From Podarcis muralis (taxonomy: Eukaryota): a stretch of 64,000 bases of DNA. This document shows, piece after piece, positions 1,865-62,685 of this stretch. Numbering within the stretch: position 1 is the first letter of the stretch; each line of letters starts with the position of its first letter. Position numbers and translations under genes: made by a program. Location of the stretch: the NCBI RefSeq assembly GCF_964188315.1, contig NC_135673.1:46500001-46564000 (forward strand). The letters run 5' to 3'. Under the pieces are notes generated by a model that saw only the letters and a program-made list of their open reading frames with translations, was not told where the DNA came from and did not search any database.

Positions 1865-3707
1865 CAGCCTGATAAAGCCAAAGCCTTTGTCCTTATGAAT
1901 GAAGACTTCTCCAGCCTTCCCATATTTTTCAAAGAGCTTCCTCATCTCTTCTTCTGTGATATCAGGGGGCAGGTTCCCCACAAATAGGCGACTTCTCTGT
2001 GTGAAGGTCTTTTCGCCAGGTTTTCGGAAATTCTTCATGTCAATTGTCAGGCCTTCATCTGAGGGGAATAAGGTACAGAATCGCTCTACAAAATTGGGGG
2101 AACAAACGCTGAGTGTTAACACATTGAAGAGCACAAAGGTCAGAACATTCACCAAGTCTCCCAACACACATCCAGTCTTAACTATTTTAGCAGCAACTGC
2201 AGGTCAACACAAGTCGGAGGCCCTGGGAGTCGGAGTCAGCCCCATAGCAGCCTTTGCCCTGCGCAGATGAAAGATATGGCCCATTGACTGAAAATGCAAA
2301 GCCACCTGCAGGACAGCCAGAGCACTGCAAATGCTGGAAGGATAGGTCCAAAACAAAGATTTTTAGCAGCACTTACATGACAGTGCTGGAAGGAAGCTTT
2401 CTAGCACACAGCAGCAGATGGGAGAGTGGGGCTCCAAATACAGCCTGCAAATTTACAATCTGGAGGAAGCAACTCAAGATACAGTCAAATAGCAATGCCA
2501 GTTAGAACACATTACCCATTGTCTTAAAAGACTGATCAGAATCAAAGCCCAACACCAGTCTTTCTGGGTGTTTGAAGGAGGCCACATATTGCTGTGATAG
2601 AAAAAGGACTCGAGCATTAAGAGGTGAGAAAGTGCTCAGTAGCCAGAGGAACTGCAGCAAATGAAGAAGCAAGCATCCAAGTCCAGTTGTAGAAAGAAAG
2701 CCATAGTGTTCATTAAGTGCAGAAAGAAGCAAACCATCTTAGAAAGCAACCCAATCAGCCACAGAAGCATAAGCTAAGCCATGTCTCCATCCACCATTTA
2801 GCTATACCTATAATCTACAAAGCCCTGAACTCCTAGCAATTTAAAAATAATCATGCATTCTTAGGCCACTAGCAACCAAATCATTAAGTTATGCCAGCTT
2901 AGTTTGCAAGTCACATTAAAGTATAAGCAATCCTCATGTGCTGAAGGGATTTGCTGTTAATGCTAATATTGGGAAAGGGGGCGATACACCCTTTAAGAGT
3001 CAATCCAACAGTAACCTCTGGTGACCTGAGGCAGACATGTTAAGCACCTATCTAAAGTCGCAAGAAATCACACCAGATCTGGTTGAAAAATTCCCACCTC
3101 ATATATGCTTTCTGTGTCACTGAGCTTGTTCTCACCAGCCTAAGACTTTCAAACCAAGCTGTGATTCAATCATGCAACTGACCAACAGTAGTTTTGAAAA
3201 CAGTAGCTTCTGCAAGTACACAATGAACAGAATATTTTTGGAGCACACAGTGGTGACCAGGTCCAAAGGAAGACTAATACCTTGCACTATCTATAGGAGA
3301 TCTAACCATATGACTATGACATCTCCAAAGACACCAAAATGACTTGTATGGGTTTGTTCCACTGGCCACTCACAATCAGTTTGTGTGTAATTCCCTGGAG
3401 CCAGAGGGTCACTTCACACTTTATAAACAAGTAAAGGTGAAATAAAGTGCAATCACAAGCCTCCCATGTGGAAGAGAATTGGAACAGGTGCTGTGTTTTT
3501 CAAACTGTATCCCAAATGAAGTGCTGCAAGAAAGGACACCACCTCCAGTGTGGATGTTACCCAAGGAAGCTGCCACTCACTTTGGTTGTTGGCCTGCTGT
3601 CCATTAGCTGGGGGAGGTTGTTGTTGCTGCTGTTGCTGTTGGTGCTGATGCTGCTTCCTCGGAGTGTGGTTTTGCTTCTCCATAGCGAAGCCCTTGTTGC
3701 CCTGCAT
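1865..3707 (-). CDS. NONO: NONO/p54nrb (DBHS family), N-terminal part. Coding exons 3707-3581 (127 nt) and 2058-1865 (194 nt); the gene continues beyond the left edge.
   Basis: Spliced translation [23 protein letters not shown]8[77 protein letters not shown] matches the recalled NONO N-terminus and RRM1. Acceptor AG at 3717-3716, donor GTGAGT after 3581 (phase 1, A+AT=Asn), acceptor AG at 2060-2059, donor GTGAGT after 1865. Confidence 0.97.
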
Positions 3708-14633: not shown

Positions 14634-14671
14634 GTATGAGCTTTCGTGTGCATGCACACTTCTTCAGATAC
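14634..14671 (-). ncRNA. Minimal type-I hammerhead ribozyme motif (minus-strand copy)
   Basis: Exact reverse complement of 14674-14711. Confidence 0.72.
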
Positions 14672-14673
14672 GA

Positions 14674-14711
14674 GTATCTGAAGAAGTGTGCATGCACACG
14701 AAAGCTCATAC
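14674..14711 (+). ncRNA. Minimal type-I hammerhead ribozyme motif (plus-strand copy)
   Basis: GTAT-CTGAAGA-A-GTGTGC-AT-GCACAC-GAAA-GCTC-ATAC: helix I GUAU/AUAC, CUGANGA core, 6-bp helix II, GAAA, palindromic AGCU helix III, and a UC cleavage site predicted after 14707. Confidence 0.72.
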
Positions 14712-25372: not shown

Positions 25373-26199
25373 AGCTTAGAGCTCCTTGCGGGGAAAGGTG
25401 GGGCACAATAAATGCATCAATAAATGCATCAATAAATGAATTAATAGTTTCAATTTTCTGGAAAACATCATGTCTCAAGGAGTGTGTGTGGACAATTCCT
25501 TGGGGGAGTCGTGGGTGGCAGGATACGATTGATATAAGAGACAAACCCCAGATGAAGGTAGTATGGGATTGAGATGAGACTTTTGAGGGGAGAGAGGCTT
25601 TTGTAGCCGAGAGGGAAATGGGGTGTGGGAGGGTGTGGGTTTTTTGTGTGTATGTTTTTGCACGTCTCTATCCTGGTATATGAAGCGGGGCCGGATTTCT
25701 CAGGACCGTGAGGTGGGGGGGGGGGGAGTGGGAATCAAAAATATACGCAAAGCAGAGCATGTTCCGAAGGGGCACGGACCGAATGCGCGTGGGGCATCCG
25801 TGGGGAGGAGGTAAGGATAACGCGGAGTTGGGGCTCCTGTCTTTTTGTTCCGGGGAAAGGGGGACCTGGTCTTGCTAGGTGCGCCCTCCCCTACACATCT
25901 GGGGTTGTTAGAGGGGGCATTTATGCAGGGGAGAAATATTGTGAACTTGGGGATCCTGGATCGTGCCTTTGGGTGGGTGGGGGTCTGGCTCCGCAGTGTT
26001 CCACCATGGGGCAGAGACCACCCCCAGGAGGGGAAATAAGAGGAACCTCCAGGGGAGGGCGCTCAGAGATACGGTCCGGATGGGGGGCGTTGCAAGGGGG
26101 CGGGCCCTTCCCTAAGGCGGGCGGGAGGATAAAAGGTGGAGGGGTCCTCTGGCGCCGGCTCCCCAGCACCCGTCCCTCCCTCCGTCCGTCCCGGAGGCG

Positions 26200-26320
26200 G
26201 TGCCCGTGCCTGCCCCACCCTGGACGCGCGCTCGCTCTCTCCGTCACTCGCCTCCCCGGGAGACGCTGCGGCGGGGCTGCTGGTGGCGAGCGGGGAGCCG
26301 CGCAACCTGCGGGAGAAGAG
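26200..26320 (+). other. ZMYM3: Candidate non-coding first exon 1a of ZMYM3
   Basis: Consensus donor GAG|GTGAGG at 26320/26321 inside the CpG island. The start is approximate. Confidence 0.5.
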
Positions 26321-26879
26321 GTGAGGGGGCGCCGGAGGACCCCGGAGGTGTTTGATGCGGCGGGTAGGAAGAAGGAAGAGGAGATTCAACAGGGGCAGCC
26401 CCACTTTCATGTGTGTGTGTCTGGTGGGGTGGGGTGGGGGGTGGCGGTGCTTGGGGAGGGGGCGATCTCTTTCCTCGCGACCCCTCCTTGGATTTCGGAG
26501 GTAACCGTTGTGCTTGTTGTCGTTGCTCGAGATGGGGGAGGCCGGAGGGACCCCTTCCCGTACCTTCCCTCCCCGACCCCCCAACCCGCACCAACCCCCG
26601 GCGCCGTTCCGCGTTTCTGCCGTTCCGCGTTTTCCATCTCGCCCCCCCGCTCCGGGCAGCCGTGTAACTCCGCGCCGGGTTTTGCGCGCCGCCAGGCCGG
26701 TCTCGCGAGCCCGGAGCCCCGCGCGGCCAATCGGGGCGCGGGGCCCAAGCGCCGGCGGCCAATCGGGGCGCCGCCCTGGCTCGCGCCGCGGCCAATCGCA
26801 GGCCTCCCCGGACCGTCCCCCCTCGCTCGGGCTGCGGCGCGCTGAGGGCTCCGAGCGGCGCCTCCATTTAAAGGGGCCG

Positions 26880-26999
26880 CAGCAGCCACCCGAACCTTGG
26901 GCGGGCTCCGAGTTAAAGGCAGGGCTGGCGGGCAGAGAGAGGGAGGGGAGCTCGGGGAGGCCGGCGGCGGCGAAGCTCGGGTCGGGGAAGCTGCGGCAG
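26880..26999 (+). other. ZMYM3: Candidate non-coding first exon 1b of ZMYM3
   Basis: Consensus donor CAG|GTGAGG at 26999/27000, downstream of the CCAAT cluster. The start is approximate. Confidence 0.6.
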
Positions 27000-29669
27000 G
27001 TGAGGGGGCGCCGGGCGGGGCGTGGGGGAGGGGGCGGCCATCGTGGGCTGGGGGAGGGGCGGCGGCGCGGGACCTCGTGACAAGGGGCGGGGCCTGGCTT
27101 GGTTAGGGGGGCCCGAACCCGCACTGGTGGGCGGGGCCTGTAGCGATTGGGCCGCGTCACGGGGTGGGATCCTGCAGGTACTTGCTGTTCATGGGAAGGA
27201 GCCAGGCCAAGTCTCACCTGGAGCCCTTGGAGGGAAAGGGAAAGCGAGGGAAGAGGGCACTAAAAGGAGGCGGGCCTGGGATTGGCCAGGCCTGCAGTGG
27301 TGAGGTCAGGATCCTGCAGGTACTTACTGGGCAAAGGGGAGGAGGTTGTGGTCGAAGCTGGTGGCAATCCTGGCCAAGTGTCTCCAGGGGTGGGTGGGAG
27401 GGTAGCCTAAGATCTGTGCAACAAGGCAGGTCCGGGATGCACCGAAAGGGTGGGATTCTGCGGGCACTTGCTCAAGGAGAGGAGCTTACTTGTGGGTAAG
27501 GCCATCAGGTTGCAGCAGCAGGCCCAGATGTGCTTGGCATGCCACTAGAGTGTGCCGTGAAATGCAGCGGTGGTATGCTTGTTAGGCTGCCTGTGAAGAT
27601 GGGTAGGAAACTTCAGCTGGTGCAAAATTCAGCAGTGACACGAGAACGGGCCTTTTGTGTGGTGGCTCCCTGATTATGGAATGCTCTCCCCAGGAAAACT
27701 TGCCTGGCACCTTCCTTACATATCTTTAGGTGCCAGGCAAAAGTGCTCCTCTTCTCCCAAGCTTTTGGCTAATTAAACAATCTATGGCTTTTAAAATGTG
27801 TTTGTTGGAAGGGGTATTGGTTTGCTTTATTTTATTGTGCATTTTGTGTTGTCATTTTTTATTTTATGTTGTGAAAAGCTATGTGATCTTTGGACGAAGG
27901 GCAGTACACAGATTTAATAAATAGTGATAATCATCATGAGGGATTCTGCAGGTACTCGCCTTGCAAGGAGAGTTCTACTGTTAGCAGGGATGGACTACAA
28001 GCTCAGTTCAGAGAATTGTAGACTTTGAGGTAGTTTTGTAGGCCACAGGGTAGCCGTTTTCCTGTCTAAGCCAACATTGGGGAATCTGTGCCCCTCCAAA
28101 TGTTGTTGACGGCAACTTACATGTGCCCCTGACAGCATATCCAGTGGTCAGGGACTTGTAGTCAAAAAATATCTGAGGAGTCATGTTGGCAACCTCAATT
28201 GTAGGCCCACCTATCTTAGCCTATTGCTCAAATTGGGGAAACCCTGGTCAGATCTCACCTGATATTTAGAGGACAGGATAGTGGTTTGCTCTGGGATGTA
28301 TTTACACTAGGGAATAGTCATTCATGTCTTTGCTGTGAAGGGGAGGAGCAAAACCCCTGAACTGGGACCAGTTCAAGCTATAGTAGCTGATTGGCTTAAA
28401 CCAAGGTATCTGGAAAGGACCATAGATTGCAGGTTTGGGTGTTGAACTGTACTAGGAGAAAGGATCCTGTAGGCACTTGTAGAAAACAGAGGCAGTAATT
28501 GGATTGAGCTGCACCAAGTCTGAAGGAGAGAGAATGGCTTAGAAGGTTTGGGGGGCAGCGGGGGGGGGGGGGGAAGAATCTTGGAGGTCTGAGCTGGGAC
28601 AAGGCAAGCATGACTAAGTTGTACTTGTGGAGGGAGGGGAGCTGGTCTGCAGAAAGGCAGATTTGGTTTGAGCTTGGAAAACATCAAATAGCATGCAGAT
28701 ATTTGCAGAGGAAAGGGGGAGTGATGGCTTGAACTGGACTAGTTTTTGTTTTGTCTAACATCAAACGCTGGATTGTGCTGTGAGGAGTGACCAAGGCTTG
28801 TGGGAGGTGTATGTCCCACAGCCCTTATCCTTGGGAAGAGCTTTTTTCAGTAGACAACATGCTTAGGTTTAGAGTAACCAAGGAAGGAATCCAACATGAA
28901 ATTGTTGAAGATTAAAGAGCAAATGGCTTCAGCTCTGTTAGCTGTTTTTATCGTACCACTGAAATACTGCTGCTTTGAACTTCTCTGAGATGCCTGTCTG
29001 AGGGAGAGCAGTTATTTTGAGTTCTTATGAGCAGGATGCAATCTAAACATTAAAAAGATGAGTTGCTTCCCTAAAACCCAGGGGTCTTGTTCTGGTGCAG
29101 ATTCTCTACAGCTTCCAACCCATTGGGTTTAATCCTGGCTCTGTGTGTAGGTTCACCAGCCAAATAGGAAGCCTGTAGAATGTGTGGCTTGGTTATTGCA
29201 TTTGGTCTTTTGTCCTCCCCACTGCCCCTCCAACTAAATGATTGGCAGCACCTGGCTTGATGTCAGCATTCAAAGTCCCAATGACCGAATATCAAATTGG
29301 ACTGTTGATTGGATTGGACCAAGGAACCTCTCTGCACCCTGCATTCTGATGTGGGTTCAAAGCTAGCGAAAGGCAAGAACTGTACATTAACACCCATTCT
29401 CTGCTCCAATGTTGGGATGGGACTTTTGTAATATTAGCTGTTCTACTTGATTTGGAGAATTAAACTGTGGCGTGGAAAGGTTCCAAAGGAGTTGCAGACA
29501 GAGGGAGAGGAGGTTTTGCTTGTGATGTATGCAGAAATAAGAAGCGTGGAAAAGCTGTTATATGTCCCCATGGGGGGAAGTAGTAGTGACTTGTGTTATT
29601 AGCCCATAGAGTGGGCTAGAAGACTGTGGTGGGTCCCTTCCTGACAGGGGTTAGAGCAAACAGTGAGGG

Positions 29670-31906: not shown

Positions 31907-34900
31907 ATGGAGTCGAATGAATTTCCTGGCTCCTTGGGGCCAATGTCACTGCCTGATAAGCCACTGATTGGAGACCTTCCTGCAGACATGGAGTATGGAG
32001 AGGATCTGCTAGCATCCCAAACAGCCTCCATCCCACAGGCTTCAGCTCAGCAGCCCCAAGAGATGGAGTGGGAAGCACCTAAGCAAGCAACTTCAGATGC
32101 AGACCTGGACCCGGGCTTGGTGAAAACAGCCGGATTGTCTGATCTGAGCAAATCCAACAGTCTGACCCTCAGCAAGTCTGGTGCTCTAGATGTTACAGAG
32201 AAGCCCAGTCTTCTCGGTAGCTTGAGCAACAATGACAACCTGGTGGACCTGGATAAGTCTGAGGACCTGGACAACGTGTACAAGACACGAGGTTCTGCAG
32301 ATCCGGAGGATGGACCTAGGGATCCCCCTGTGCCAGGAACCGAAGCCCTTGTGCCAGAAGCATGGAAAGAAGCATCAGCATCGAAAGTAGACTTCAAAAG
32401 CACAAAGGATGATGGAGAGGAGAGTGCAGCCTCCCTTCCCGACAGCCATGTGGTGAAGTCGCCTGACGTGGTGGAGATGAGCAGCACTTCCTCCTCACAA
32501 GAACCAACAGAATATTCCGAGAACTCACCGAAAATTCCGCGGCCGGTTAAGAAAGCCCGATTGAAAGCCCCAAAGAAAAGTGCTCCAGTGCAGAAGGAGG
32601 AAGTGGCGACATCTACAGATGAGGGGAAGGAGCCTGTTCTCAACAGTACTCCAGCTCCTGAGCCCATGAAAGAGGGTGTGACTGAGGCTGAGAAAGACAG
32701 CAGTGTCAGCCAGAAGGACCCTGCTGAGCCCAAAGCACAAGAGGCTGAACAATCGCTCCAACCTCCAGGTGGGTAAGCAGGAAGGAGGGCTCTCCCTAGA
32801 GCATTGCCCCAGCCCCACTTTTGCTTCTGCTCTGAAGCCAAGCGTGGGGAGGGGTGCCAGGAGCTGCTCCCACTGTTCTTCTCTTGGGTAAAAAGCTGTT
32901 GCAACTCGTTTCTGTTTATAACTAGCCAAACCTAGAGAATGTGATACCTGGCCAATCAGGAGATACAAAAGAGTAAATAAAATCAACTATATATAATGTT
33001 GATTATTTTGTTGTTGCTGTATATAAATCTTTGCTTATCTAAATTAATGAAATTATGTTCATTTAGTACCTTTATTTATTCTTTTGCATCTTTTGTAAAT
33101 AGCCCCTGCTTTGACTTTGCTCGGCAAACAACAAATTAGAGGTTATGTTATGTTATGTTAATATTTTATTTATCATTTTCAACAAATTAGATGTCTGGCC
33201 ATTCTCCTGTTCCTTGCAAGATTATACGATTACAATTCACATTTATACTCCATTGTTCTCCTCCTTCATTTCATCCTCACAACAACGTGCCATAGTAATT
33301 TAGGCTGAGAGACTGTGACTGACTCCAAGGTCACCCAGCGTGCTTCATTGCTGAGTGGGGGATTTGAACCCTGGTCTCTCAGGTCCTAGTCCAACACTCA
33401 GACCACTACATCACACTGGCTCCTTTCCTTTCTTCCCCAGCTTCTTCCCCAGACAGAGCTAGAGAGCTTGGTCAGCTGTCTGAATGTTGCGCCAGTTGTA
33501 AAGGTGTTTCTACTCTCTCTTCCTCTCACCAGCCACACACACCCATAGATGGTTCATTGATAGCTTTCAAGCAGCATCTTAACTCAGTGATGTTTTCGGC
33601 ATTAGTTTGTTCCATTCCTGACCCTCGTTAGAGTGTAAGACCATAAGAAGATCAGGCCAATGTCCCATCTAGTCCAGCATAGTGAATCCAGAGTGGCCGA
33701 CCAGATGCTCTAATGGGAAGCCTGCAAGCTAGCCATGAGCACAAGAGCTCTACCCACCTGTGAGTCCCAGAAACTGGCATTCAGAAGCATAATGCCTCTG
33801 ACAGTAGCTGTAACAGCTAGTACTAATTGATAATAGAATCATAGAATGGTAGAGTTGGAAGGGATCTCAAGGGTCGTCTAGTCCAACTTCTAGTCTCAAC
33901 ATGCAGTTCCCCCATCCAATTTGAAACCATACTGGACCCTGCTTAGCTTTGCAGATGTGCGAGCAGTTTTCCTGCTGCACCACTGTTCTCCCTGAATTTG
34001 TCCAGTCCTCTTCTAAAGCCACCTAGACTGGCAGCCTCACAGACAGCTTTGAGGTCTCTCTTGTGTTTCTCTTGCAGGGGAAGACCCTGGCGCAAAAGGG
34101 AGCGAGAAGCCAGTTGTGAAGGTAAGGGAGGAGGCAGCTGAAGCAGCCGCCACCCGGTTGAGTGTTTGTCTTTCCACTAAGACCCTCCTAACACTTTCCT
34201 CGATCCCCGATTTTTGTTTTTTGTTTTTTTGGCGTGGGGGAAATTATTGACATGTTCTGTTCATTTCAGGCTTAAAGTTTCTTGCACTGTACGTTTCCTT
34301 CCTCCTCCTCCTCCTTTGTGAGTGGGTGTGCATCACTAAACCAGTGTCCCCCAACCTGGTGCTCTCCAGTTGTTTCGGAATGTGATGTTCTGGGCTTGGT
34401 CAACAACATCTGTATGGCAGCAGGTTGCAGGAAGTTGGTTTAGACTGTGGACCTGTGGGCAGGGGTTACTCTCAACCATACCTGCCATTCTTAGGTGGTC
34501 AGTAAACAATTTCAGAGATGGGGGTTTCCCTGGGCTGCTTGCCATTGTCTGTTTAGATGGTTCCTTGGTTTGTTCCAGGAGCAGAAGAGAAGCGAGCGTG
34601 CCAGGAGGGCGGAAGTGTCTCGGCCTGAAACAGTGAACTCCTCTGAGAGCAGTAAGTTACCTCCTTGACTGTAAGAGGACCATGCTTTACATATGCTTTA
34701 CGTATTATAAGAAGCTGTGTTATTCCTGGTTAGACCCTTTCTTCATCTAACCTGTTGTTATCTACTGTAATGGGCAGCAGCTCTCCAGAGTTCAGGCAGA
34801 AGAGGGTCTTGATCAACACTTGCTTGCCTGGAATATTTTAAAACTAGGCGTACTGGAGCTTTCTGCATTCAAAGTGAGCACTCTGCCACAGAGGTGTGGC

Positions 34901-48600: not shown

Positions 48601-51600
48601 TCGCGGGACTCCATGAGCAGCCAGCCCAGCTGTACAGCCCTCAACTACTCCTATGGTGTGAACGCCTGGAAGAGCTGGGTGCAGGCCAAGTACGCTGGTG
48701 GCGAGACCAGCAAGGGCGACGAGCTGCGCTTTGGCCGTAAGTCTGCGCCACGCGGAGGGGCAGTTGCAGTTCTAGGAGATGGGGATGCTGGAGTCAGGGA
48801 GGGAGGAGGAGGAGGAGGAGGAGGAGAAGGAAGGTGTGCCCCCCCCCGGCACTCAGAGGGGGGTTTCTTGGCCGTTCCTCTACCCTCAGAGACTTGAGTT
48901 GGGAGGTTGTAGCCTCTAAGTTGTGGAACTCCCCACAGAGGTGCACTCCTGACACCTTTGTTGCACTGCATATAGCAAACGCCAAAGACGTACTCTTTGC
49001 CCTGGCTTTTGACGCCAGAGGTGCATATTTTAGGGCTTTCCTTTAGTTTTGTGGTTGTAAGTTTGTTTTAGGTTGCTTTTATTAGTTTCGTTTTAGTGCT
49101 ATAGCCCAACTTGGGGACCTTAATTGATGACGGTGATGATGATAATGATCACTCTGCTCTGTTGCTGTCCTGCAGCCAAACCCATGCGGATCAAAGAGGA
49201 CATTCTGGCCTGCACAGCGGCAGAACTGAATTACGGTCTGGCCCAGTTTGTGAAGGAGATCACTCGTCCCAATGGCGAGCGCTATGAGCCTGACAGCATC
49301 TATTACCTCTGCCTTGGCATACAGCAGGTAAGGAGACCCCCCCCCTCCCAAATCTTACCTTCTTTCCATATGCCCAGAAGCAATTGGACCAGCATCCTGC
49401 TGCCGATACACCTGTTGGCTGGCAAGAGAGCTTTCTCTGGGACTGACACATAAGGCTATTGTGTAGGAGGCCGTGATGCTTTTGAATACCTGTTGCTGGA
49501 AACCACAGGAGGGGAGAGTGCTCGAATGGGAGAAATTCATGGAGGAGAGAGCTATTGGTGGCTACTAACCACCGTGGCTCGGCTCTACCTTCACAGCGGG
49601 AGACAGGAATGCTTCTGAATACCAGCTGCTGGAAACCACAGCCGAGAGGGCTCCCGTGCTCTAATCCTGCTTCCTGGCTTCCCACAGGCATCTGGTTGGC
49701 CACTGTGAGAACAGGATGGCATTGGCCTGATCCAGCAGGCTCTTATTAGGTTCGCACGTTCTTACCAGCCTAGCAAGTGTTCTGTATGGAGCTGGGGGGA
49801 GGTAATGAGAGTGTGCATGGGAGAGAGCAGGTTTTGCAGTTTCCTACTTGAATTTGTGTTTCCCATCTCCCCCTTTCAGTACCTGCTGGAGAACAACCGC
49901 ATGGTGAACATCTTCACGGACCTCTATTACCTGACCTTTGTGCAGGAGCTCAACAGGTTGCTCAGCGGCTGGCAGCCCACCATCCTGCCCAATAGTACGT
50001 GCCTTGGGGGGGGGGGCAGAGGGAGGGAAATAAGAGAGGTGTTTTCCTCTTCCCTCGGCATCCTGGGAGAAGTTTCCAGATTCTGGGAAAGGGATATATA
50101 TCGGGCTGTCCAATTTTCAGCGGGTAGCACTAGAGCAGGGAATGGGCTCTTGCCTTCCTGCTTCACTTAGGGGCTTTTCTTGGGACACCCTCCCAGGCAC
50201 CTAATGGATCTTTTGAGGCTCTCATCTGGACTTAATGCTCATAGTCACTGTCAAGCAAAAGGGCCAAGTTCAGAGGCTTCCAGGTCAGGCTTTGGGCATT
50301 TATTTCTTGGTGTCCTCCCCCCACAACAATCACAGTTTGTGGAAGCAGGTTTAATATTTATTACCCACCCTTCACCCCAAGGTTACAGCATTAAAACACA
50401 ATATCGAAAGCAACTGGTAACCATAAACGTTAGGTAGGTCCTAAAACCACATGTCAGAAGCCCAGGGTAAAGAGGTGTCCCTTAGGCATTCTCCAAAAGC
50501 TGTATGATGAAGGCACCAGATGCACTTTTGTGGGGAGGGAGTTCCACAGGCTGCCACCCCTTAAGCCTCTGAGGGTGGAGGAACCACTGAGAGGACCTTC
50601 TCTGCCCATCTTAGCACCCAAGAGGGTCTGTGGTGCTTTGTGCATAGGATATCGACAGCTCTTGGTCTTTTCAGTGAACTGTTCATCAGTCTGTTTTTAT
50701 AGCCATCCCAGGAAGCAGGGCTGTTTTTCATCCTCTTTTCTTCATTCTTAATTTTGGCCCAAGAAGGCGATGGCCGAGCCAGGATTTGAACCCAAGCCCA
50801 ATCTTTTTGGTATAGCTGCCGAGCCAGCCCTTGCCAACTTGTCGCTCTCCAGATATTTTGGACTTGCTGGCGAGAGTTCCCAAACACCTGGAGGTCAACA
50901 GCTTAGGGAAGGAAAGAGTTCAAAAATTATTAGACCAGGTGTTGGAAACCTTTAGTCCTCCAGATGCTGCTGAACTACAACTCCCATCATCACTGACTAT
51001 TGGCAGATGGGAGTTGTAGTCAGAGAACCAAAGGTTCCCCATGCTTTTATGGAGCCAAAGAAGGCGAGCAAAGAAAGAATGCAGCAAACTTACAGAAAGA
51101 TGAGGAATGGTTGAGGAAGTTGGCAGTGTTTAGCCTGGAGAAGAGAAGACCAAGGGGAGATAAGATAGCCATCTTCAAATAACTGAAGGGCTGCCACACG
51201 GCAGATGGAGCAAGCTTGTTTTCTCCTTTTCTGGAGGGTAGGACCTGAACCAATGGGTTCACGTTACAAGAAAGGGGATTCCGGCTCAACATCAGGAAGA
51301 AACTTTGGGCACTAAGAGCTGTTTGACAGTGGAATGGACAGCCTCAGAAGGTGATGATGGCATCTCCTTCATTGGAACGGAGGTGGTCGTCTGTCATGGA
51401 TTATTTAGCTGTGATTCCTGCATTGCAGAGGGTTGGACTACATGGTGCCTTGGGAGCCTTTCAGTGCTATGGTTCTATTCAAGTTAAAAAAAAGATGGTC
51501 TGGAAGCCGTAAACCAATTTCCTCCAAACTGGTGCCATGTCCGGTTGTTTTAGATTCCCCCCAGCCTGTGTTGGCCGGGGCTGATTGGAGCTGGAGTCTG

Positions 51601-54491
51601 AAACATCTAGGGTGTCTGGGTTGGGGAGGGCTGCACTAAATGATAGGTTCATGCGTGTAGTGCAGAAAAAGAGCTAGAAAATATGCTGAAATGAATATAT
51701 GTATATAACAAACACTTCCCCTCTCCAAAGTAACAATTGATGGGTTTCTCGTACTGGTTTCTTGCCAGCCGTGTGCTCGATTGTGCGCACAGCAGAAAAC
51801 GAGCAACTGAGTTTATTATACTAAGGCCAGTTCTAAATGCGTCAGACCTGAGAAAAGGAGGGGGTCCCATAGCAACAGGCTACTTAGGTTTCCTGGTATT
51901 GCACCAGATGCAGCCTTCCTAGCCTCTTAGTGCAGCGCTCTTCAACCTGATGTTTTCTGTATCTTTTAATTAAAATATATGTATATATAAATAAGCCACA
52001 CCTTCAAACTGAACATCAAAAGGCAGTATGCAGCTTAAAAGCGCAGCAGTGTAATAATAAAAATATTAAGAATGTCAGATGTATCAATAAAAGCTCATGG
52101 TAAAGAATGTCAGGTTTGAAAGGCCCACCTGAGTAAAACAGTTTGCAGAAACAATGGCTTCAAGGTACAAGGAAGGACTTTCTGATAGCAAGATCTGTTT
52201 GACATGGAACGGTCTCTCTCAGGAGGCTGTGGGCTCTCCTTCCTTGAGGGTTTTTAAGCAGAGGTTGACTGGCCACCTGTCATGGATGCTTTAGCTGAGA
52301 TTCCTGCATTGCAGGGGGCTGGACTGGATGACCCTCAGGGTCCCTTCCAGTTCTGCAATTCTAAGATGCCTACAAGTTGAGCTTGGATGACTCTTGCCAA
52401 ACCTCTGTTCGCAAGGAGTTCCACAGGGCAGGGCCAAGGGAACCTCAGGAGCATGTTGGACCACCCAGAGTTTCCCATCAGAAGGCTTAAGTGATCCAGG
52501 TGGGGCATAAGACACCAGGGGCTTCATAAAGCCCAGTCAACTTGATCTGCAGCTCCCATGAGCCCTAGCCAGTGCATCAAAGCACAGTTCTTGGCTCTGT
52601 CTGTTGCCTTGTGGCTCACTATGCCTGTGACAGTGGTGGCTTCTCCTTTTGCAGACACCGTCTTCTCCCGCGTGGAAGAGGAGCACCTCTGGGAGTGCAA
52701 GCAGCTGGGCGTCTACTCCCCCTTCGTGCTCCTCAACACACTCATGTTCTTCAACACCAAGTTCTTTGGGCTGCAGACAGCTGAGGAGCACATGCAGCTC
52801 TCCTTCACCAACGTCGTGCGCCAGTCGCGCAAGTGCACCACAGCACGGGGCACCACCAAGGTGGTGAGCATCCGCTACTATGCTCCCGTGCGGCACCGGA
52901 AGGGGAGAGGTAGGGAATGCTTTCCGCCCACATCCATTTGCTGCCCATCTGTTTTGGGGGTGCCCCTGTCCTGACTGCACCTCCACACTCTCCCTGCAGA
53001 TGGCGGCCTGGGCAAGCGGAAGCGAGAGGAGGAAGCGCCTGTCTTGGAGCAGCGCGAGAACCGCATGAACCCCCTGCGCTGCCCGGTCAAGTTCTACGAG
53101 TTCTATCTCTCCAAATGGTGAGAGCCTTTTGCAGCAGCTGACTGCCAGAGGGTGCAGGGCTGCTGAATGCCAGCTGCTGGGAAACCGCAGGAGGGGTGAG
53201 GTGGCTCTTGTGCTCAGGCCTTGCTTGCGGGCTTTTTGCTAGGCGTCTGGTTGGCCACTGCGAGAACAGGGGGCCCTTGGCCCATTCCGACAACTAGGCC
53301 CATTTGATATTCAGTTGGTTCCTGAACGTTAGTTGGCTGGGCTCAGGGGTCCCCAGTATGATGGCAGTAGGCCATGGACCCCCGCAGAGGCTTTCCCTGG
53401 GGCTTGGAGGGTCGTCCCTGACCCCAGTTTTCCTCTGCGGATATTAAGCTTGGGGAGGTTGACTGTTGCTCACTCCTCCAAAACTTGCACCCTCCAGAAA
53501 GATTGCACCATCCTCTCCCTCCCCCCCCCCCGACACCCATTAGGCTTAAGAAAAAGAAAAGGCCCCCTTTTGAAGCCTAAATGCGTTGGTGGGAACGAAC
53601 TCCTAGTGGTGCAACAGTAAAGGTGCTAGCACATTTGCAAAGCTAAGCAGGGTCTGGTATGGTTTCAAATGGGATGGGGGACTGTGTGTTGGGAATCCTG
53701 CATTGTAGGGCATTGAGCTAGATGGTCCTCAGGGTCCCCTCCAACTCTACAATGCCTCGTTTCTGTGTGCACAGGGTCGCAGTGCGCAAGATTGCAGCTC
53801 ATGCATGGTGGTGCTCATGACAGTTTCTCTGCATTGCCTCAGTACTTGAAGGACCCAGAAAGCTTGGCTACACCCCCCCCCCCCCCCGTTTCGCTGTTAG
53901 GTAGATGCCGATGGCAGGGGGAGGCTAGTGCCGTTGCTGCCAGTGGTGGTGGTAGTCATATGCAGTGGTGTTTTACCCATTCATTTTTTTTAAACGGGCA
54001 ACAAGGGCGGTGGTGGCAGCAGGATGCAGCAGGCATTGAGGCAGCCATTGTGAAGATGGAGCAGGTGGTGTTGAAAGGTTTTGGCCAGAGCAGAAAGCCG
54101 CTGCTCTGCAGTCCTTGCTCCTCAGTGCAGCTTGGGGTCCCCTGTCTCTTGGTTCAGGGCTTATGTGCTGAACCTGAAGAGCGGGCAGTGGGGGACCAGG
54201 GAAGGGTGGGGTTCCCGCCTAGGCCAGGAGCCCCTTCTCTGGCCTCATTGCTTATCTCCTCTTGCCTTCCTTCCTTCCGGCTGCAGCCCTGAAAGCCTGC
54301 GAAACCGCAATGACGTCTTCTACCTGCAGCCTGAGAGGTCATGCATCGCCGAGTCGCCGCTGTGGTACTCCGTCATCCCCATGGACAAAAGCATGCTCGA
54401 GAGCATGCTCAACCGCGTCCTGGCTGTGCGCGAGATCTACGAGGAGCACAGCCGCGGAGGTGGAGGCGGCCTGGATGACGAAATGGACTGA
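31907..54491 (+). CDS. ZMYM3: Zinc finger MYM-type protein 3, complete, 24 coding exons, 4296 nt, ~1431 aa
   Basis: Exons: 31907-32768, 34078-34121, 34585(or 34579)-34651, 35396-35687, 35923-36100, 37314-37526, 37931-38081, 38915-39030, 40566-40652, 40970-41120, 41619-41791, 41914-42079, 43634-43698, 44011-44185, 44505(or 44508)-44620, 44728-44902, 45272-45418, 46160-46263, 48568-48736, 49176-49327, 49880-49994, 52655-52909, 53000-53117, 54287-54491. All introns are GT-AG and phases match. Tandem MYM fingers (CxxC...FCSxxC), PxP-rich LPIPVPIFVPVP, C-terminal DUF3504-like region (LLNTLMFFNTKFFG, NPLRCPVKFYEFYLSKCP). The first coding exon's acceptor is at 31894-31895. Confidence 0.97.
37704..37763 (+). 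repeat. Compound (GT)n-(AG)n microsatellite
   Basis: Read directly from the sequence. Confidence 0.95.
42602..42661 (+). repeat. (TTTC)15 microsatellite
   Basis: Read directly from the sequence. Confidence 0.95.
47164..47399 (+). mobile_element. hAT-type MITE (third copy), right TIR truncated
   Basis: CAGGGGTCAGCAAACT...GGGCCTTAGTTTGCC, colinear with 18930-19171. Confidence 0.85.
51090..51480 (+). mobile_element. CR1 LINE 3' fragment
   Basis: Encodes LRKLAVFSLEKRRPRGDKIAIFK and carries the CR1 3' UTR motif. Other CR1 tails at ~9280-9330, 22050-22120(-), 33835-33890(-), 38735-38800(-), 45870-45960(-), 52135-52365 and 53690-53750. Confidence 0.8.
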
Positions 54492-55364
54492 GCAGGTGGT
54501 GCCGGTCTTGCCAGAGGGAGATTGGGGGCCCCCAGCACTACTCCAGTCAGCTAGTGGGTGACTGTGGGGTGTGTGTGGCTTGCTGCCCCTTTCCTGCCTG
54601 GTTTGGTGGGCACATAGGGCTCTAGACACTCCCCACTAGGTGATCCCTTTCCCTCTGACGAGGAGCCACCCCCACCCTCCCCTCTCCTCCCACGCTGCCT
54701 AGGAGTGCCTGCTTGCCTGCCCCTTTCTCCTTGCTATGTGTTGGCTTGGGGGGAGTGCCACAGGTAGGCTCTTCGCCTGGGGAGGGAAGGGTGCAGGGCG
54801 TGTCTTCGCTGTTGCAGGAGAGCTGGGCTCTGGGGGTGCAGACCCTGTGCCTGGTTGTGCTAATTGGGGCGGGGTGAATGAATTGGCTCCTTGCCGTGCA
54901 CGTTCTCTTGCACGGGGTGGGGGGGTGGGGGCTTCTACAGTTCTCCCCTTGCCCAGTAGATGGCAGTCCTCCCTCCCCCCACCCATCCCCAACGGTTGAA
55001 CACTCTGTTCTCTCTCGTGTTGGGGGAGACTAGGCCCTAGCATTGCACCCTGAGCCTCCTTCTCCCCTGCTTCCTCGATGCTAGCTTGGCCGCCCACCCC
55101 ACCACGCCCACTGCCCCATGAGGCAGAGGCTGCTCAGCATCCCACCAACCCTTTCCTCACCCATCTGTGTGTGTTGCGTTGAACTCTGAGCTATGGCTGG
55201 TGCTGGTGCTGGTGCTGTCTGTTGAGCCTGTATATATTGTTCTGGCCCAGCCCCTGTCTGTGTCCTTGTTGCCAGTGAGCCAGTCTGCGGGTCTCGTCGT
55301 CGTAGTGATGCTCAGGGCATTAGGACCTGCCCTCCCCGCGTCTCTCTGGAAACCATTCATTTCA

Positions 55365-55370
55365 AATAAA
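55365..55370 (+). terminator. Polyadenylation signal of ZMYM3 (3' UTR ~54492-55390)
   Basis: First AATAAA downstream of the stop codon, followed by a U/C-rich tract. Confidence 0.7.
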
Positions 55371-56129
55371 GGCACAAAAACTTTGCCGACTTGTCTCTCT
55401 TCATCTCTTATTCCAGGGCTGTGGTCCTTGTCTCTGTGCCCCCAAAATGTGGTGATGCACGAGAACAGGGTTGGAGGCCCCATGTACCAGCGAGGTAATT
55501 TCCATTGGTGGGTGTGCATGTGGCAGCCAGCATGCCTTACCAACTTTTATGCCCCCAGGGGAAGACCTCCACCCCCTTCCCTGACTTGGCTGCTGTGGGT
55601 CCCATTGCATCCGCTCTCTGCTCCGACTGAGCCTGCCTTGAAGCGTGCTCTTTCCACTTCCTGGCCACTAAGGGGCAGCAGACACCAAGAGAATCTTCCA
55701 AAGTGCCTGGCCATTGTCCAGTGCTCTTCTCTGCTTGTGGCTTTGCAGCAGCTGCTCCCAAAAGTGGCTGAAGTCTCTGCTTCAGGCATTTGGGGCTGAT
55801 GCCTAGAAGAAGAGGGTCTCGAGACTTAGGACCAGCCTGGGACTCTCCCTCAGAGTCCCCCTTCTTCATTGGAAAGGGAGCTGTGAAGTCTCTGCTGCTT
55901 CTCCTAGCGTGGCAAAGTTGCTCTCTGATGAAAGGGCAGGCTTGGGAGGTAAAGGAGAGAGGCCTGAGGCTTCCTAATTCCTGAGCAGGTACAGGCTACC
56001 TTTCCTCCAGCCCAGGAATTCTCTGTCTGATCAGGCATTGGGGTAGGGATTTCGACTTGGTGGTGCATCTAATGCCCGTGGGAACACTTGGGTCTTGCTA
56101 TCCAGTGTGAGGTTAGCAAAGTCCCTTGG

Positions 56130-57068
56130 CTAAACAGCCAGGTCACTGGACCTCCACTTGTTGCTTGATTTGCTGGACTTGCTTCCTCGCTTCTGCCCTC
56201 CGCCCCAAGCGGGGCTCTCGCTCACTCCCTCCGTCCGTGGACTGGCTTTCTCTGCAGGCTGCAGAGAGGGGCTGCTGGGAGGCGTAGCACTGGGGCAGTG
56301 AAGCAGGCGGTGGCGGTGGCTGGCAGGCTCTCCTTCCGGCTGCCCTTCTGGGCTGAGCTTGGGCTCAGGGCCTTGCCTGCACTTAGTGGTGGCCACGTGG
56401 TACAGCTCCACCATGTTGAGCAGGAGGGAGAGGCAGGCGACGGCCAGCATGAAGAGGATGAAGATGGTTTTCTCGGTGGGCCGGGAGATGTAGCAGTTGA
56501 CCGTGTTGGGGCAGGGCCAGCGGCTGCAGGTGTAGAGGGGCTTCAACTCAAAGCCATACAGCACGTACTGGCCCAGGATGAAGCCCACCTCAAAGAGAGC
56601 CTTGAAGACAACATTGCAGAAGTACGTTCGCAAGATGGCCCCTTGCAGGCGGATCCTTCCGCAGGCGTCCCGCACAGGGGCTGTGCCAGGCCTGGGCTGA
56701 GCTGCTGGGCTGCTGCTGACCTCCACCTGAACCCCCGGGGAGGCCCCCAGCTCTTTCTCTTCCATGCGCACCAAGTGCAGGATGTGGCCCAGGTAGATGA
56801 GGCTGGGCGTGGAGACGAAGATGATCTGCAGCACCCAGAAGCGGATGTGGGAGATGGGGAAGGTCTGGTCGTAGCAGACGCTCTGGCAGCCGGGCTGCTT
56901 GGTGTCGCAGGAGAAGTTGGACTGCTCGTCCCCCCACACCTTCTCTGCTGCCGCCCCCAGGACGAGGATGCGGAAGATGAAGAGGACAGTGAGCCAGACT
57001 TTGCCCACCACCGTGGAGTGCTCCTGTGCGCTCTCCAGCAGCCTCCCAAGCAGGTGCCAGTCGCCCAT
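56130..57068 (-). CDS. Alpha-group connexin, GJA3-like (gja2/cx39.9-type by synteny), 312 aa, single coding exon
   Basis: Starts [50 protein letters not shown]1 C-x6-C-x3-C ([12 protein letters not shown]), E2 C-x4-C-x5-C ([12 protein letters not shown]), [10 protein letters not shown]-terminal ...RSSDLAV. Acceptor TTTCTTGCAG at 57090-57089, 20 nt before the ATG. Confidence 0.93.
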
Positions 57069-57615: not shown

Positions 57616-60600
57616 GCAAGCTTCCTATGCTACACACCACCCCTAGCACCACCTGCGAAAAATAAGTAAATAGCGGACCAAGATTACTACCGGCCCAAGC
57701 TGGGGTTGTGCCCAAAGCAGCAAGTTCATAGAGCCAAGGTGGCTGCTGGGGGTGGGGTGGTAAGTCCTTCCAAAGTCAGACTCCACCCAGGTGCAGCAAC
57801 ACTCACCCTGTCTGCGTTCGGAGGTCCTGGCATCAAAACACTTCACATCCTGGCCAGCATCCCAGGTGTTGTCAGCTCCCTTGGGTGTCAGCAGCTCCTC
57901 CTTCGAGCCACCTCTGAGCGCCTGTCCGGCTGTCTCTTCCGCCGGTGACCACAATGGAGCAACGATCTCTTCCTGGTGTCTCTCCTCCCTGGGCTGGGGC
58001 TTTGTTGCCATTGGGGCTTTGCTGCTCATTGGCTGTTTTCATGACTGACCTCTGCAGCATCCACTGGGGGGTCACTTCCAACACTCTTATTTTTGGACAG
58101 CACACTTGGTTAATTATAGCCCCTCCTGCAGGGCGAGTGCGAAGGGTGAGTGGGGTTATATTTAGGCAGGAGCTCTCTGGTGAGAGGGACCTTGGAATGA
58201 CCTGCGGACGAGAGAGGCTATGCTCTGGGATGGTCGTTCTGCTTCCTCTAGTCAGTCACCACCTCATCACCCTCGGAAGCCGCAGCATTCCTCCCTCTTG
58301 TGTCTGTAGCAATGGTAGGGAGAAAGTCAACAAAGAGAAAGGGGAATATTTCCCCCCCGCATGTGCTGCTAAAACTTTGGACCACCCGGTGAAGCTGAAT
58401 GTTGGAAACCTTAACAGACAAAAGAAAGGACTTATTTATGGTGTTCCCACCTGGTGATGGCCACCTACCTGGGTGGCTTTAGAAGATTAGACAAAATCAT
58501 GGAGAACAAGGCTACTGGTGGTCACTGACCCTGATTCCTGTGTTCTCCCTCTGCTTTGGAGACAGTAAACGAAAACCAGTTGCTGGGAATCCCAAGCAGA
58601 GAGAATTGTGTTGTGCTCATTTCCCAAGTGTGGGTTTCCAAGAGACATCTCCTTGGCCAATTTGAGAACAGGATGCTGGACTAGATGGGCCCCTTTGGCC
58701 TGATCCAGGAACCAGCATCATCTTACATTCTGAATGTGACATTTTGGGGGATGCAGTGCCTCTTGTGCAGCTTCTTGCAACAAGCCAGTATGCTCCCAAC
58801 TCAAGAGAGCTGCTTCAGAAGTCAGGGAGAGTAGTGTGACAGGTTACCAACCTCCTTTGTGACCAACCTCCTTGCCCACATCCCAGTCCAGTGGTCACTG
58901 GAGCAGGTGGTACGCAGTGGCTTATGTTGGGGAAGGGAAATAAATATATCTTGCGTTCTTGCACAGTGCATTTTCCTGTGCAGTGTACAAGCCAGTATGT
59001 TGTGTGGTTTGAGTGCTGAACTAGGACCTTGGGAGGCCAGGGTTTGAATCTCCTCTGAAGCTCCCTAGGTGACATTGAACCACTCACTGCCTCTCAACCC
59101 TAACCCACCTCACAGGGTTGTTGTGGGGATTAATTGGGGGGGGGGGTAGCCATGTCATTGAGCTCTCTGAAGGAAAGGTGAGATGTAAATGCAATGCAAC
59201 CAATCAATAAAACCACTCAGTGTTTATCAGGGACCACTTGAGGTGAAGAGGAACAAAACATTTTCAAGGTGAGCACAGCACAAGGTTCATCTGCCATGTG
59301 GACCTTAGCAATTTACCCTGCACACTCACATACCAGTAAGATAAGCAGGTGGTGTCAGAAGGCTAGGCTTCACTTTATGCATTTTAAAGTAAAAAAATAA
59401 ATAAGTCAACTGCATCATACGGAGTCAGTTCTTTGGTCCATGTAGCTCAGTATTGACAACACTGGCTCGCCAGGGTTTGGGGTAGGGAGACAGTCCAAGC
59501 TCTGCCTCAAACCTGCCTTTTTGTTTTCAGTTTTCTAAAACTAGATACCTGGATCTGTTTATAAGCCAAGGTTAACTCATTTAAAAGTAGGAACATTTTA
59601 AAAATAATTGCAAGTGTGAGCTGGGGATTTTGGGGAGAGCAGTGCACGGACGGGAACAACCTGTCCTCGGGCAGCTTTTCCTCATCCAGGCTGAAAAACC
59701 TGCAGGAATTTCCCTCGGATCTTGTTCTTTGAAAGAAAAAAGGGTACTTGTGGATGAAGCACAGCTTCCAAACCTCCCCATCCACCTTACTCTGCAAATG
59801 TTTGACCTTCTTTGAATCGCAGCCCTGTCCCTCTGGCCTGAGCAGAGCAGCCTTCCTGTCAGCAATGTCCTTCATGCAGCAAGTTTTGATAGGCTATGCT
59901 CTTATCTTCACTGTTGGAGGCAGTATGCTCCGAAATCCCCACTGCTGGAAACTACAGGGAGGGAAAGGTTGCTGCTGGATCAGGTCCTGCTGGCAGGCTT
60001 CCCATCTGGTTGGCAACTCTGCCGGATTAGATGGGCCACCAACCTGATCCAGCAGGGCTGTCCTTAGGTTCTTCAGCCTCAAGTCTCCAGAGGTGGCTGT
60101 TCCCAGCCAGCTTAGCCAGTGGGCATCTTGGACACTCAAGGTTGAAGAACACCAGAATAGACTATGTAAGAGCCCTGCATGAAAACTTGCAGCAGTGTGG
60201 CCGTTGAGGATTAGTGCCCTTCCTGAGCTCCCGATGAGAAGCGGTTACTCAATGGTCAGTAGATGGGGCTATTCTCAATTTTGGGATGAAGCAGGGGCTT
60301 TCCCCTCTGGGCATGTTGCTCAGAGCCGTTCCCAACCCACTGGAGATTTGCCCTGCTCTTCTTGCATGGAGCTCCAGACCTTTGGTTGAATGAAAGAGCC
60401 GCCCTACCTTGTTAGGAAAGAGGCACAGCTCAGGGGTAGGTCCACCTGCCTTGCATTTGCCATATGTCCAGTTAAGAAGGATCAAGTAGTACGCAATAAG
60501 GAGGACCCTGCAGAACTACTGTCAGGAAGTGGAGAAAAGTCCTAGCTGGACAAAGAAGTCTGCCTTAGGATGCCAACTTCTGAAATATTGCTGGAATAAT

Positions 60601-61848: not shown

Positions 61849-62685
61849 TTAGCAGGCTGAGCATCGGTCACTCTTCTCTTGTATCCCTGAGTTCCGCCGG
61901 AGAATGTCTTTGAGGGAGCCGTCCTGCTCCGTCAGCAGCTGGTTGATTTCGTTCTGCTTGTACTCAGAGAGCTTGTGGCCCAGGAAGGAGCCCTTCTTCG
62001 ACGAAGGGTTGTGGCTCTTGGATGCGCGGCGGGCGCAGGCCCTCACCAGCAGGAACACCACCTCCGTCAGGTTGAGGATGATGCAGATGCCCGAGGTGGC
62101 CAGCATGAAGACGGTGAAGACGGTCTTTTCGGTAGGGCGCGAGATGAAGCAGTCGACCGTGTTGGGGCAGGGGTACACGTCGCACTTGACCAGGCGGATC
62201 ATCTGGTACCCTGGGTAGATCATGTAGAAGATGTACATGAAGGTGCCTTCAAAGACGATGCGGAAGATCACGCTGCAGATGTACGTCCACCACAGGGACC
62301 CTGAGATGCGCATCTTGTGCTTCTTCACCTCCTCCAGGTGCTTGGGGTCTCCGTGGCCCGTCATGACCAAGAGCTTCTTCTCCTGATGCTGCTGGTATGC
62401 CACGTGCATGGCCACCAGCAAGGCCGGCGTGGTCACCAGGATGAGCTGTAGGGCCCACAGGCGGATGTGGGAGATGGGGAAGTAGTAGTCGTAGCAGACG
62501 TTCTTGCAGCCAGGCTGCTGCGTGTTGCAGGTGAAGGACGACTGCTCATCCCCCCAGACGCTCTCCGCGGCCACGACCAGCACCATGATGCGGAAGATGA
62601 ACACCACAGAGAGCCAGATGCGGCCAATGGCGGTGGAGTGGCGGTTTACACCGATCACCAGGGCATAGAAGCCTTCCCACTTCAT
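61849..62685 (-). CDS. GJB1: Gap junction beta-1 protein (connexin 32), 278 aa, single coding exon
   Basis: Starts [47 protein letters not shown], has intact Cys motifs, and ends [24 protein letters not shown]...SDRCSAC. Acceptor AG at 62699-62698, 12 nt before the ATG. Position next to ZMYM3 fits known synteny. Confidence 0.96.

What the first reader, a model, noticed from the sequence alone, without database searches (positions are those of the whole stretch)
56130..57068. Intact extra alpha-connexin between ZMYM3 and GJB1: the ohnologue missing from the human X locus
Seen: an uninterrupted 312-aa GJA3-like ORF with all six extracellular cysteines and a DLAV C-terminus, in the same orientation as GJB1. 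Known: human Xq13 runs NONO-ZMYM3-GJB1 with no GJA gene, whereas the paralogous block at 13q12 runs PSPC1(-) ZMYM2(+) GJA3(-) GJB2(-), and 1p34 has SFPQ, ZMYM4, GJA4 and GJB3-5. The window has exactly the 13q12 order and strands. Inference: this is the whole-genome-duplication sister of GJA3 (gja2/cx39.9 lineage of fishes), retained in this lizard and lost in human. It has a short, divergent C-tail and its function in reptiles appears little studied.
Basis: partly seen in the sequence, partly recalled or inferred. Interest (0 to 1): 0.75.

Follow-up and report, generated by a model that had tools for sequence, protein, structure and literature searches.

The report
Lizard gja2 connexin gene, already described
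This is an intact, selectively constrained gap-junction gene (gja2, the fish cx39.9 family) lying between ZMYM3 and GJB1 in the wall lizard; its presence in non-mammalian vertebrates, its absence from mammals and its linkage to gjb1 are already published, so it is real but ordinary.

Summary
Window 56130-57068 (-) is an uninterrupted 312-codon connexin ORF (Pfam Connexin, E 2e-95). It has both three-cysteine loop motifs, four hydrophobic segments and a DLAV end. It lies between a ZMYM gene (+) and GJB1 (-), with NONO (-) further left.

The interpretation also holds. In a 40-protein ML tree the protein falls in a clade (100/99) with sauropsid, amphibian, lungfish and ray-finned "gja2/cx39.9" proteins. 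That clade is separate from the GJA3 clade of a mammal plus teleosts (99/96). Forcing the tetrapod sequences together with mammalian GJA3 is rejected (AU p 4e-7). dN/dS is 0.13-0.19 among squamates. The gene order GJB1, gja2, then a convergent ZMYM gene recurs in Rhineura, Sceloporus and goose; gja2 and the ZMYM gene are also neighbours in a turtle and in gar.

It is not new. Mikalsen et al. 2020 named cx39.9/"gja3-like" gja2. Mikalsen et al. 2021 state that fishes and non-mammalian tetrapods except crocodiles have it, that it is GJA3-related, and that gja2-gjb1, gja3-gjb8 and gja4-gjb3 are linked pairs. Kojima and Jurka 2011 drew the ZMYM2/3/4 ohnologous blocks with GJA, GJB and NONO/PSPC1/SFPQ genes.

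Verdict: a correct reading of an already known gene; low interest.

The parts
56130..57068 (-). gja2 coding sequence (312 codons plus stop), all within exon 2
   Evidence: 100% identical to the C-terminal 312 residues of NCBI Podarcis muralis model P0001
57069..57088 (-). 5' leader within exon 2; exon 2 starts at 57088, just after the acceptor AG at 57090-57089
   Evidence: sequence read, compared with the junction ...RRQG|[10 protein letters not shown] of model P0001
57089..57806 (-). intron (718 nt) with donor GTGAGT at 57806-57801, a polypyrimidine tract and an AG acceptor
   Evidence: the two-exon layout with an upstream leader exon is usual for connexin genes (general knowledge)
57807..58029 (-). 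exon 1, whose 5' end is unknown. It holds an in-frame ATG at 58029 that the NCBI model uses to add 81 residues; this is probably 5'UTR
   Evidence: The extension is not conserved: the P. raffonei model reads this exon in another frame, and the Rhineura, Sceloporus, turtle, goose and gar products start MGDW
61849..62685 (-). GJB1 (Cx32) coding sequence, 278 aa plus stop, the upstream neighbour on the same strand
31907..54491 (+). ZMYM-type gene (ZMYM3 by position), convergent with gja2; its stop at 54489-54491 is 1.6 kb from the gja2 stop
   Evidence: zf-FCS and TRASH_ZMYM4 exons, DUF3504 exons, stop position, and a 1433-aa called product
1865..2065 (-). NONO RRM1 exon; the gene runs off the left end of the window

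Best explanation
This is the Podarcis muralis orthologue of gja2 (zebrafish cx39.9), an alpha-type connexin.

Inferred from the family: six subunits would form a hemichannel, and two hemichannels would dock through the cysteine-stabilised extracellular loops into a gap-junction channel that couples neighbouring cells electrically and metabolically. The conserved C-terminal D-L-x-V/I end is the kind of motif through which other alpha connexins bind the scaffold protein ZO-1; this step is inferred from my own knowledge of that family.

By orthology with zebrafish the most likely site of action is developing skeletal muscle, which is inferred and not tested in any reptile.

The gene is one of three or more ancient copies of a GJA-GJB pair that sit next to ZMYM and DBHS paralogues: gja2-GJB1 with ZMYM3/NONO, GJA3-GJB2/6 with ZMYM2/PSPC1, and GJA4-GJB3/4/5 with ZMYM4/SFPQ. 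It arose before bony vertebrates diverged, was kept in most non-mammalian lineages, and was lost in mammals.

Shown here: the intact ORF, family membership, the orthogroup, the local gene order and purifying selection. Inferred: channel activity, the tissue, and a whole-genome-duplication origin.
For: - The ORF is intact and matches Pfam Connexin at E 2e-95.
- The cysteine motifs and four transmembrane segments are present.
- The best solved relatives are GJA3 (395 bits), then GJA8 (330) and GJA1 (284).
- The best database hits are squamate, turtle, bird, tuatara, amphibian and lungfish 'GJA3-like' proteins and fish 'gap junction protein alpha 2' or 'connexin 39.9'.
- The gja2 clade has 99 SH-aLRT support in a 91-row tree and 100/99 in a careful 40-row tree. 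Branching within it largely follows the species tree (lungfish groups with the ray-finned fishes). The GJA3 clade (Marmota plus teleosts) is separate at 99/96.
- The AU test rejects tetrapod gja2 plus mammalian GJA3 as one clade, with a log-likelihood difference of 101 and p 4e-7.
- dN/dS is 0.19 for Podarcis-Rhineura and 0.18 for Podarcis-Sceloporus. The core (residues 1-235) gives 0.13-0.14 and the tail 0.22-0.26.
- 59 of 70 orthologues end in DLx[VIL].
- The gene order is conserved in five other species.
- Literature: PMC7066803, PMC7914757 and PMC3212892 for evolution; PMC9073686 and 10.1101/2023.12.20.572619 for zebrafish muscle expression and loss of coupling in mutants.
Against:
- No canonical AATAAA or ATTAAA lies on the minus strand within 1.7 kb downstream of the stop.
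- The sauropsid tail is about 50 residues shorter than in fish and amphibians and evolves faster, so regulation may differ from that of zebrafish Cx39.9.
- In my tree gja2, GJA3 and GJA4 form one group (85/97), but the order among them is unresolved.
Confidence: 0.93

Rival explanations
1. It is a recent, lineage-specific duplicate of GJA3 in lizards or sauropsids that landed next to GJB1.
For: NCBI names most tetrapod members 'gap junction alpha-3 protein-like', and GJA3 is the best solved relative.
Against: The clade includes lungfish and ray-finned fish gja2/cx39.9 and is separate from a GJA3 clade that itself holds a mammal and teleosts. The AU test gives p 4e-7 against a union with mammalian GJA3. 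The same position next to a ZMYM gene is found in gar. Mikalsen 2021 recovered gja2 as an orthogroup with 14 of 14 methods.
Confidence: 0.01
2. It is an unexpressed relic: an ORF that is still open but on its way to becoming a pseudogene, as happened in mammals and crocodilians.
For: There is no RNA evidence here and no canonical polyA signal nearby. The tail is short and fast-evolving. The family is known to be lost in some amniotes (PMC7914757).
Against: dN/dS is 0.13-0.19 across squamate divergences with dS of 0.4-0.65. The ORF is intact in 13 of 13 squamate, 4 of 4 turtle and 14 of 14 bird models, with conserved ends. Canonical splice sites flank an upstream exon used by the NCBI gene model.
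Confidence: 0.03
3. The gene is gja2, but the gja2-GJB1 block arose by a regional (segmental) duplication of a GJA-GJB pair and not by whole-genome duplication, so 'ohnologue' is the wrong word.
For: Mikalsen 2021 (PMC7914757, section 3.4) argues that, if no genome duplication followed the cyclostome-gnathostome split, regional duplications must explain the gjb1-gja2, gjb8-gja3 and gja4-gjb3.2 pairs. Lamprey sequences do not sort one-to-one into gja2 and GJA3 in my trees.
Against: The duplicated unit also includes the ZMYM and DBHS (NONO/PSPC1/SFPQ) genes, in the same order and on the same strands (and my own knowledge of the human maps). ZMYM2/3/4 are listed as 2R ohnologues, and the three blocks with GJA and GJB genes are drawn as ohnologous in PMC3212892, Figure 7B.
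Confidence: 0.2

Closest known systems
gja2 / connexin 39.9 (zebrafish cx39.9; 'gap junction protein, alpha 2' of fishes)
   Same: Same orthogroup. 55-78% identity over the aligned part, which covers 75-100% of the query. Same neighbours, gjb1 and a ZMYM gene (PMC7066803 Table 2; PMC7914757). Same MGDW start and D-L-x-V/I end.
   Different: The lizard protein has 312 aa against about 356 in fishes and amphibians, because of deletions in the C-terminal tail. Muscle expression and coupling are shown only in zebrafish.
GJA3 (Cx46), the lens fibre connexin
   Same: It is the closest solved structure (395 bits over residues 1-265) and is reported as the sister orthogroup (PMC7914757 Table S1). It has an analogous position next to a ZMYM gene and a GJB gene.
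   Different: It forms a separate clade (99/96) and the AU test rejects a union. GJA3 has a much longer tail (416-443 aa in the mammalian cluster) and is present in mammals.
GJA4 (Cx37)
   Same: It is the third alpha connexin of the triplicated ZMYM/DBHS/GJA/GJB block, and it groups with gja2 and GJA3 in one clade with 85/97 support.
   Different: It is more distant in sequence. It lies in the ZMYM4/SFPQ block, and its endothelial expression is my own knowledge of the family.

Membership tests
Connexin (Pfam PF00029) | Match to the family profile above the curated cut-off | tested here: met
   319 bits against a cut-off of 31.3, E 2e-95, profile positions 1-223 of 225
Connexin (Pfam PF00029) | Four transmembrane segments and three cysteines in each extracellular loop (C-x6-C-x3-C and C-x4-C-x5-C) | tested here: met
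   C54/61/65 and C181/186/192; hydrophobic segments around residues 18-46, 75-100, 153-171 and 197-226
Connexin (Pfam PF00029) | Forms hexameric hemichannels and intercellular channels | not testable with these tools
   Inferred from 395-bit similarity to solved Cx46 channels
gja2 / cx39.9 orthogroup | Falls in one supported clade with fish gja2/cx39.9, apart from GJA3, GJA4, GJA5 and GJA8 | tested here: met
   100/99 support and 99; AU test p 4e-7 against the GJA3 union
gja2 / cx39.9 orthogroup | Chromosomal linkage to gjb1 (PMC7914757; PMC7066803 Table 2) | tested here: met
   GJB1 lies 4.8 kb upstream on the same strand in the window. The same order is found in Rhineura, Sceloporus and goose
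gja2 / cx39.9 orthogroup | Expression in developing skeletal muscle and a role in muscle-cell coupling, as in zebrafish | not tested
Known only for zebrafish (PMC9073686; 10.1101/2023.12.20.572619)
2R ohnologue of GJA3 | Lies in a block whose other genes are paralogues of the genes flanking GJA3, in the same order and on the same strands | tested here: met
   NONO(-), ZMYM(+), gja2(-), GJB1(-). The human 13q12 and 1p34 maps come from my own knowledge and from PMC3212892 Figure 7B
2R ohnologue of GJA3 | The duplication dates to the vertebrate genome duplications and not to a segmental event | tested here: inconclusive
   The split predates bony vertebrates, but lamprey sequences are unresolved and PMC7914757 leaves both scenarios open

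The most novel reading that the evidence does not exclude
gja2 may have been lost repeatedly in amniotes. Beyond the published losses in mammals and crocodilians, it may also be missing from snakes, since no snake appears among the 120 best hits although 20 other squamates do. The retained sauropsid copy, with its tail shortened by about 50 residues, may have taken on a role different from the embryonic-muscle coupling seen in zebrafish. The zebrafish literature still calls the gene 'teleost-specific', so an amniote model such as chick or lizard for muscle gap junctions has been overlooked.
Probability: 0.2. Interest if true: 0.35.

Novelty: already known. Interest (0 to 1): 0.12.

Why it matters
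It matters little for discovery, because the gene family, its distribution, its loss in mammals and its linkage to gjb1 are all published. There are two practical points. First, NCBI labels this gene 'Cx32.2-like' in Podarcis and 'GJA3-like' or even 'GJA3' elsewhere (Pogona), and its Podarcis model carries a doubtful 81-residue N-terminal extension, so the annotation should read gja2, 312 aa. Second, a recent zebrafish muscle preprint calls gja2 'teleost-specific', whereas birds, turtles and lizards keep it under purifying selection. Its role in muscle coupling could therefore be tested in chick or lizard embryos.

Tried and rejected
- **RNA evidence.** Later work on the ORF was local or used other parts of the window.
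- **L001 as an independent copy.** L001 proved to be the same assembly as the window (100% over 17,871 bp), so it is not independent support.
- **The one mammalian hit.** P0029 (fin whale, 521 aa) is a fused GJB-GJA4 model ending ...KKQYV, not a mammalian gja2.
- **ZMYM3 versus ZMYM2/4.** This was not tested directly.
- **A lizard GJA3 for the tree.** I ran no further search on this, because the GJA3 clade already spans a mammal and teleosts.
- **Snakes.** I did not follow up their absence from the hit list.

Full report
**Observation**

The minus strand of window 56130-57068 holds an uninterrupted reading frame of 312 codons plus a stop. It starts [26 protein letters not shown] and ends SSDLAV. 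It matches Pfam Connexin (PF00029) over almost the whole profile (319 bits, E 2e-95). It has the two cysteine triplets of the extracellular loops (C54-x6-C61-x3-C65 and C181-x4-C186-x5-C192) and four hydrophobic segments.

**Source of the window**

The protein is 100% identical to the last 312 residues of an NCBI model from Podarcis muralis, P0001, which is named 'gap junction Cx32.2 protein-like'. The window is identical over 17.9 kb to GCA_964188315.1 OZ076968.1. L001 is therefore the same assembly and is not independent support.

**Gene structure**

- The NCBI model has 393 residues because it starts at an ATG at 58029 in an upstream exon.
- That exon ends at 57807 with a consensus donor (GTGAGT at 57806-57801).
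- It is joined to an acceptor (AG at 57090-57089), so exon 2 begins at 57088, 20 nt before the MGDW start codon.
- The 81-residue extension is not conserved. The sister species' model (P. raffonei, P0002) reads the exon in a different frame. The Rhineura, Sceloporus, turtle, goose and gar products all begin MGDW.
- A leader exon followed by a single coding exon is the usual connexin layout (general knowledge).
- I therefore take 312 aa as the real product and the extension as an annotation artefact.

**Surroundings**

- *GJB1.* About 4.8 kb upstream on the same strand lies a 278-aa connexin ORF (61849-62685). It scores 513 bits against solved GJB1 and 353 against GJB2.
- *ZMYM gene.* On the + strand, convergent with gja2, is a ZMYM-type gene. 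It has zf-FCS/TRASH exons at 35.4-41.8 kb, DUF3504 exons at 52.5-54.5 kb and a stop at 54489-54491, only 1.6 kb from the gja2 stop.
- *NONO.* At the left edge, the exon at 1865-2065 (-) is NONO (139 bits, against PSPC1 103 and SFPQ 93).

That the ZMYM gene is ZMYM3 follows from its neighbours; I did not test it against ZMYM2 or ZMYM4.

**Orthology**

The 120 best database hits fall into two naming groups:

- squamate, turtle, tuatara, bird, amphibian and lungfish proteins, mostly named 'GJA3-like';
- ray-finned fish proteins named 'gap junction protein, alpha 2' or 'connexin 39.9'.

The only mammalian entry, P0029, is a fused GJB-GJA4 model.

I took representatives of the whole alpha family from the exhaustive search and named key ones by cluster look-up.

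- *Quick tree, 91 rows.* The window protein falls in a gja2 clade with 99 SH-aLRT support.
- *Careful tree, 40 rows.* The gja2 clade has 100/99 support.
  - Its internal branching largely follows the species tree: Podarcis with Rhineura, then Sceloporus, gecko and tuatara, with turtle and birds completing the sauropsid clade and the amphibians around it. The lungfish groups with the ray-finned fishes and not with the tetrapods.
  - The GJA3 clade (Marmota GJA3 plus teleost gja3) is separate at 99/96.
  - gja2, GJA3 and GJA4 together form a group (85/97) that excludes GJA5, GJA8 and GJA1/10. This fits three copies of one ancestral gene.
- *AU test.* Holding the eleven tetrapod sequences together with mammalian GJA3 costs 101 log-likelihood units (p 4e-7).

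**Selection**

Nei-Gojobori estimates on codon alignments made from the fetched loci:

| Comparison | dN/dS, whole | dN/dS, core (1-235) | dN/dS, tail (236-312) | dS, whole |
|---|---|---|---|---|
| Podarcis-Rhineura | 0.19 | 0.14 | 0.26 | 0.40 |
| Podarcis-Sceloporus | 0.18 | 0.13 | 0.22 | 0.65 |

The last twenty or so residues ([20 protein letters not shown]) can be traced to gar (RRPSRSSKHSNNKTRLDDLKI). The gene is under clear purifying selection.

**Conserved gene order**

| Species | Arrangement found |
|---|---|
| Rhineura | GJB1-like connexin, gja2, then a convergent ZMYM gene of about 1430 aa |
| Sceloporus | same |
| Goose | same, plus a neuroligin-like carboxylesterase-fold gene beyond GJB1 |
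| Turtle | gja2 and the ZMYM gene are neighbours; GJB1 is not within 10 kb |
| Gar | gja2 and the ZMYM gene are neighbours; GJB1 is not within 10 kb |

**Mechanism**

By family membership the product should form hexameric hemichannels and docked intercellular channels. Its closest solved relatives are Cx46 and Cx50. The D-L-x-V/I end resembles the ZO-1-binding ends of other alpha connexins (my own knowledge; not tested).

In zebrafish, gja2/Cx39.9 is expressed in developing skeletal muscle, and mutants lose coupling among muscle cells and show weaker slow-muscle contraction (PMC9073686; 10.1101/2023.12.20.572619). That is the best guess for the lizard, but it is inference only.

**Expression**

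I could not test it. 

**What is already known**

- Mikalsen et al. 2020 (PMC7066803) proposed the name gja2 for cx39.9/'gja3-like' and tabulated cx39.9 and gjb1 on the same chromosomes in teleosts.
  - It recovers gja2, and gja2+GJA3, with 14 of 14 methods.
  - It includes lizards.
  - It notes the tightly linked pairs gjb1-gja2, gjb8-gja3 and gja4-gjb3.2.
  - It discusses genome versus regional duplication.
- Kojima and Jurka 2011 (PMC3212892, Figure 7B) drew the ZMYM2, ZMYM3 and ZMYM4 synteny blocks with GJA, GJB and SFPQ/NONO/PSPC1 genes as ohnologous.

It is correct but not new.

**Verdict**

What remains open is reptile expression and function, the true 5' and 3' ends of the transcript, whole-genome versus segmental origin, and a possible further loss in snakes.

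Noticed in passing
window 57807-58029 (-): NCBI's Podarcis muralis model (393 aa, named 'Cx32.2 protein-like') adds 81 N-terminal residues from an in-frame ATG in the leader exon. The extension is not conserved, even in P. raffonei, and would sit in front of the pore-lining N-terminal helix. It is probably an annotation artefact, and the name is also wrong (the gene is gja2).
   Followed up: partly
one search hit list (no window coordinates): No snake appears among the 120 best hits, although 20 other squamates, including the limbless Rhineura, do. No crocodilian appears either, which agrees with the published loss. This could mean loss or strong divergence of gja2 in snakes, or only that snakes score below the list cut-off.
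   Followed up: no
window 54489-56130: ZMYM3 and gja2 are convergent, with only 1.6 kb between their stop codons. The one canonical polyA signal in between is on the + strand (AATAAA at 55365). None lies on the minus strand between 56129 and 54400, so the gja2 3' end is undefined and the two 3'UTRs may overlap.
   Followed up: partly
bioRxiv 10.1101/2023.12.20.572619: This zebrafish muscle preprint calls gja2/Cx39.9 a 'teleost-specific connexin'. That conflicts with Mikalsen 2021 and with the sauropsid, amphibian and lungfish orthologues found here.
   Followed up: yes
window 14568-14818: An earlier first-reader note reports a 194-bp palindrome with two hammerhead ribozyme cores here. An Rfam scan of 14000-15400 at gathering threshold found no family. 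I did not look further.
   Followed up: partly
window 4592-5149 (-), 12991-13491 (-), 16362-16916 (-): There are fragments of mobile elements in the NONO-ZMYM3 interval. Pfam identifies a reverse-transcriptase piece (RVT_1) and an integrase piece (Integrase_H2C2 plus rve). A third ORF has no Pfam hit. I described them only.
   Followed up: partly
window 6000-8000 and 26000-28000: Two GC-rich stretches (GC 0.60 and 0.64) look like the CpG-island promoters of NONO (-) and ZMYM3 (+). This is inferred from position only.
   Followed up: no
L005 1-1251 (goose): Beyond GJB1 in goose lies a 934-aa carboxylesterase-fold gene, probably a neuroligin, consistent with an NLGN3-GJB1 neighbourhood (the gene name is from my own knowledge).
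   Followed up: no
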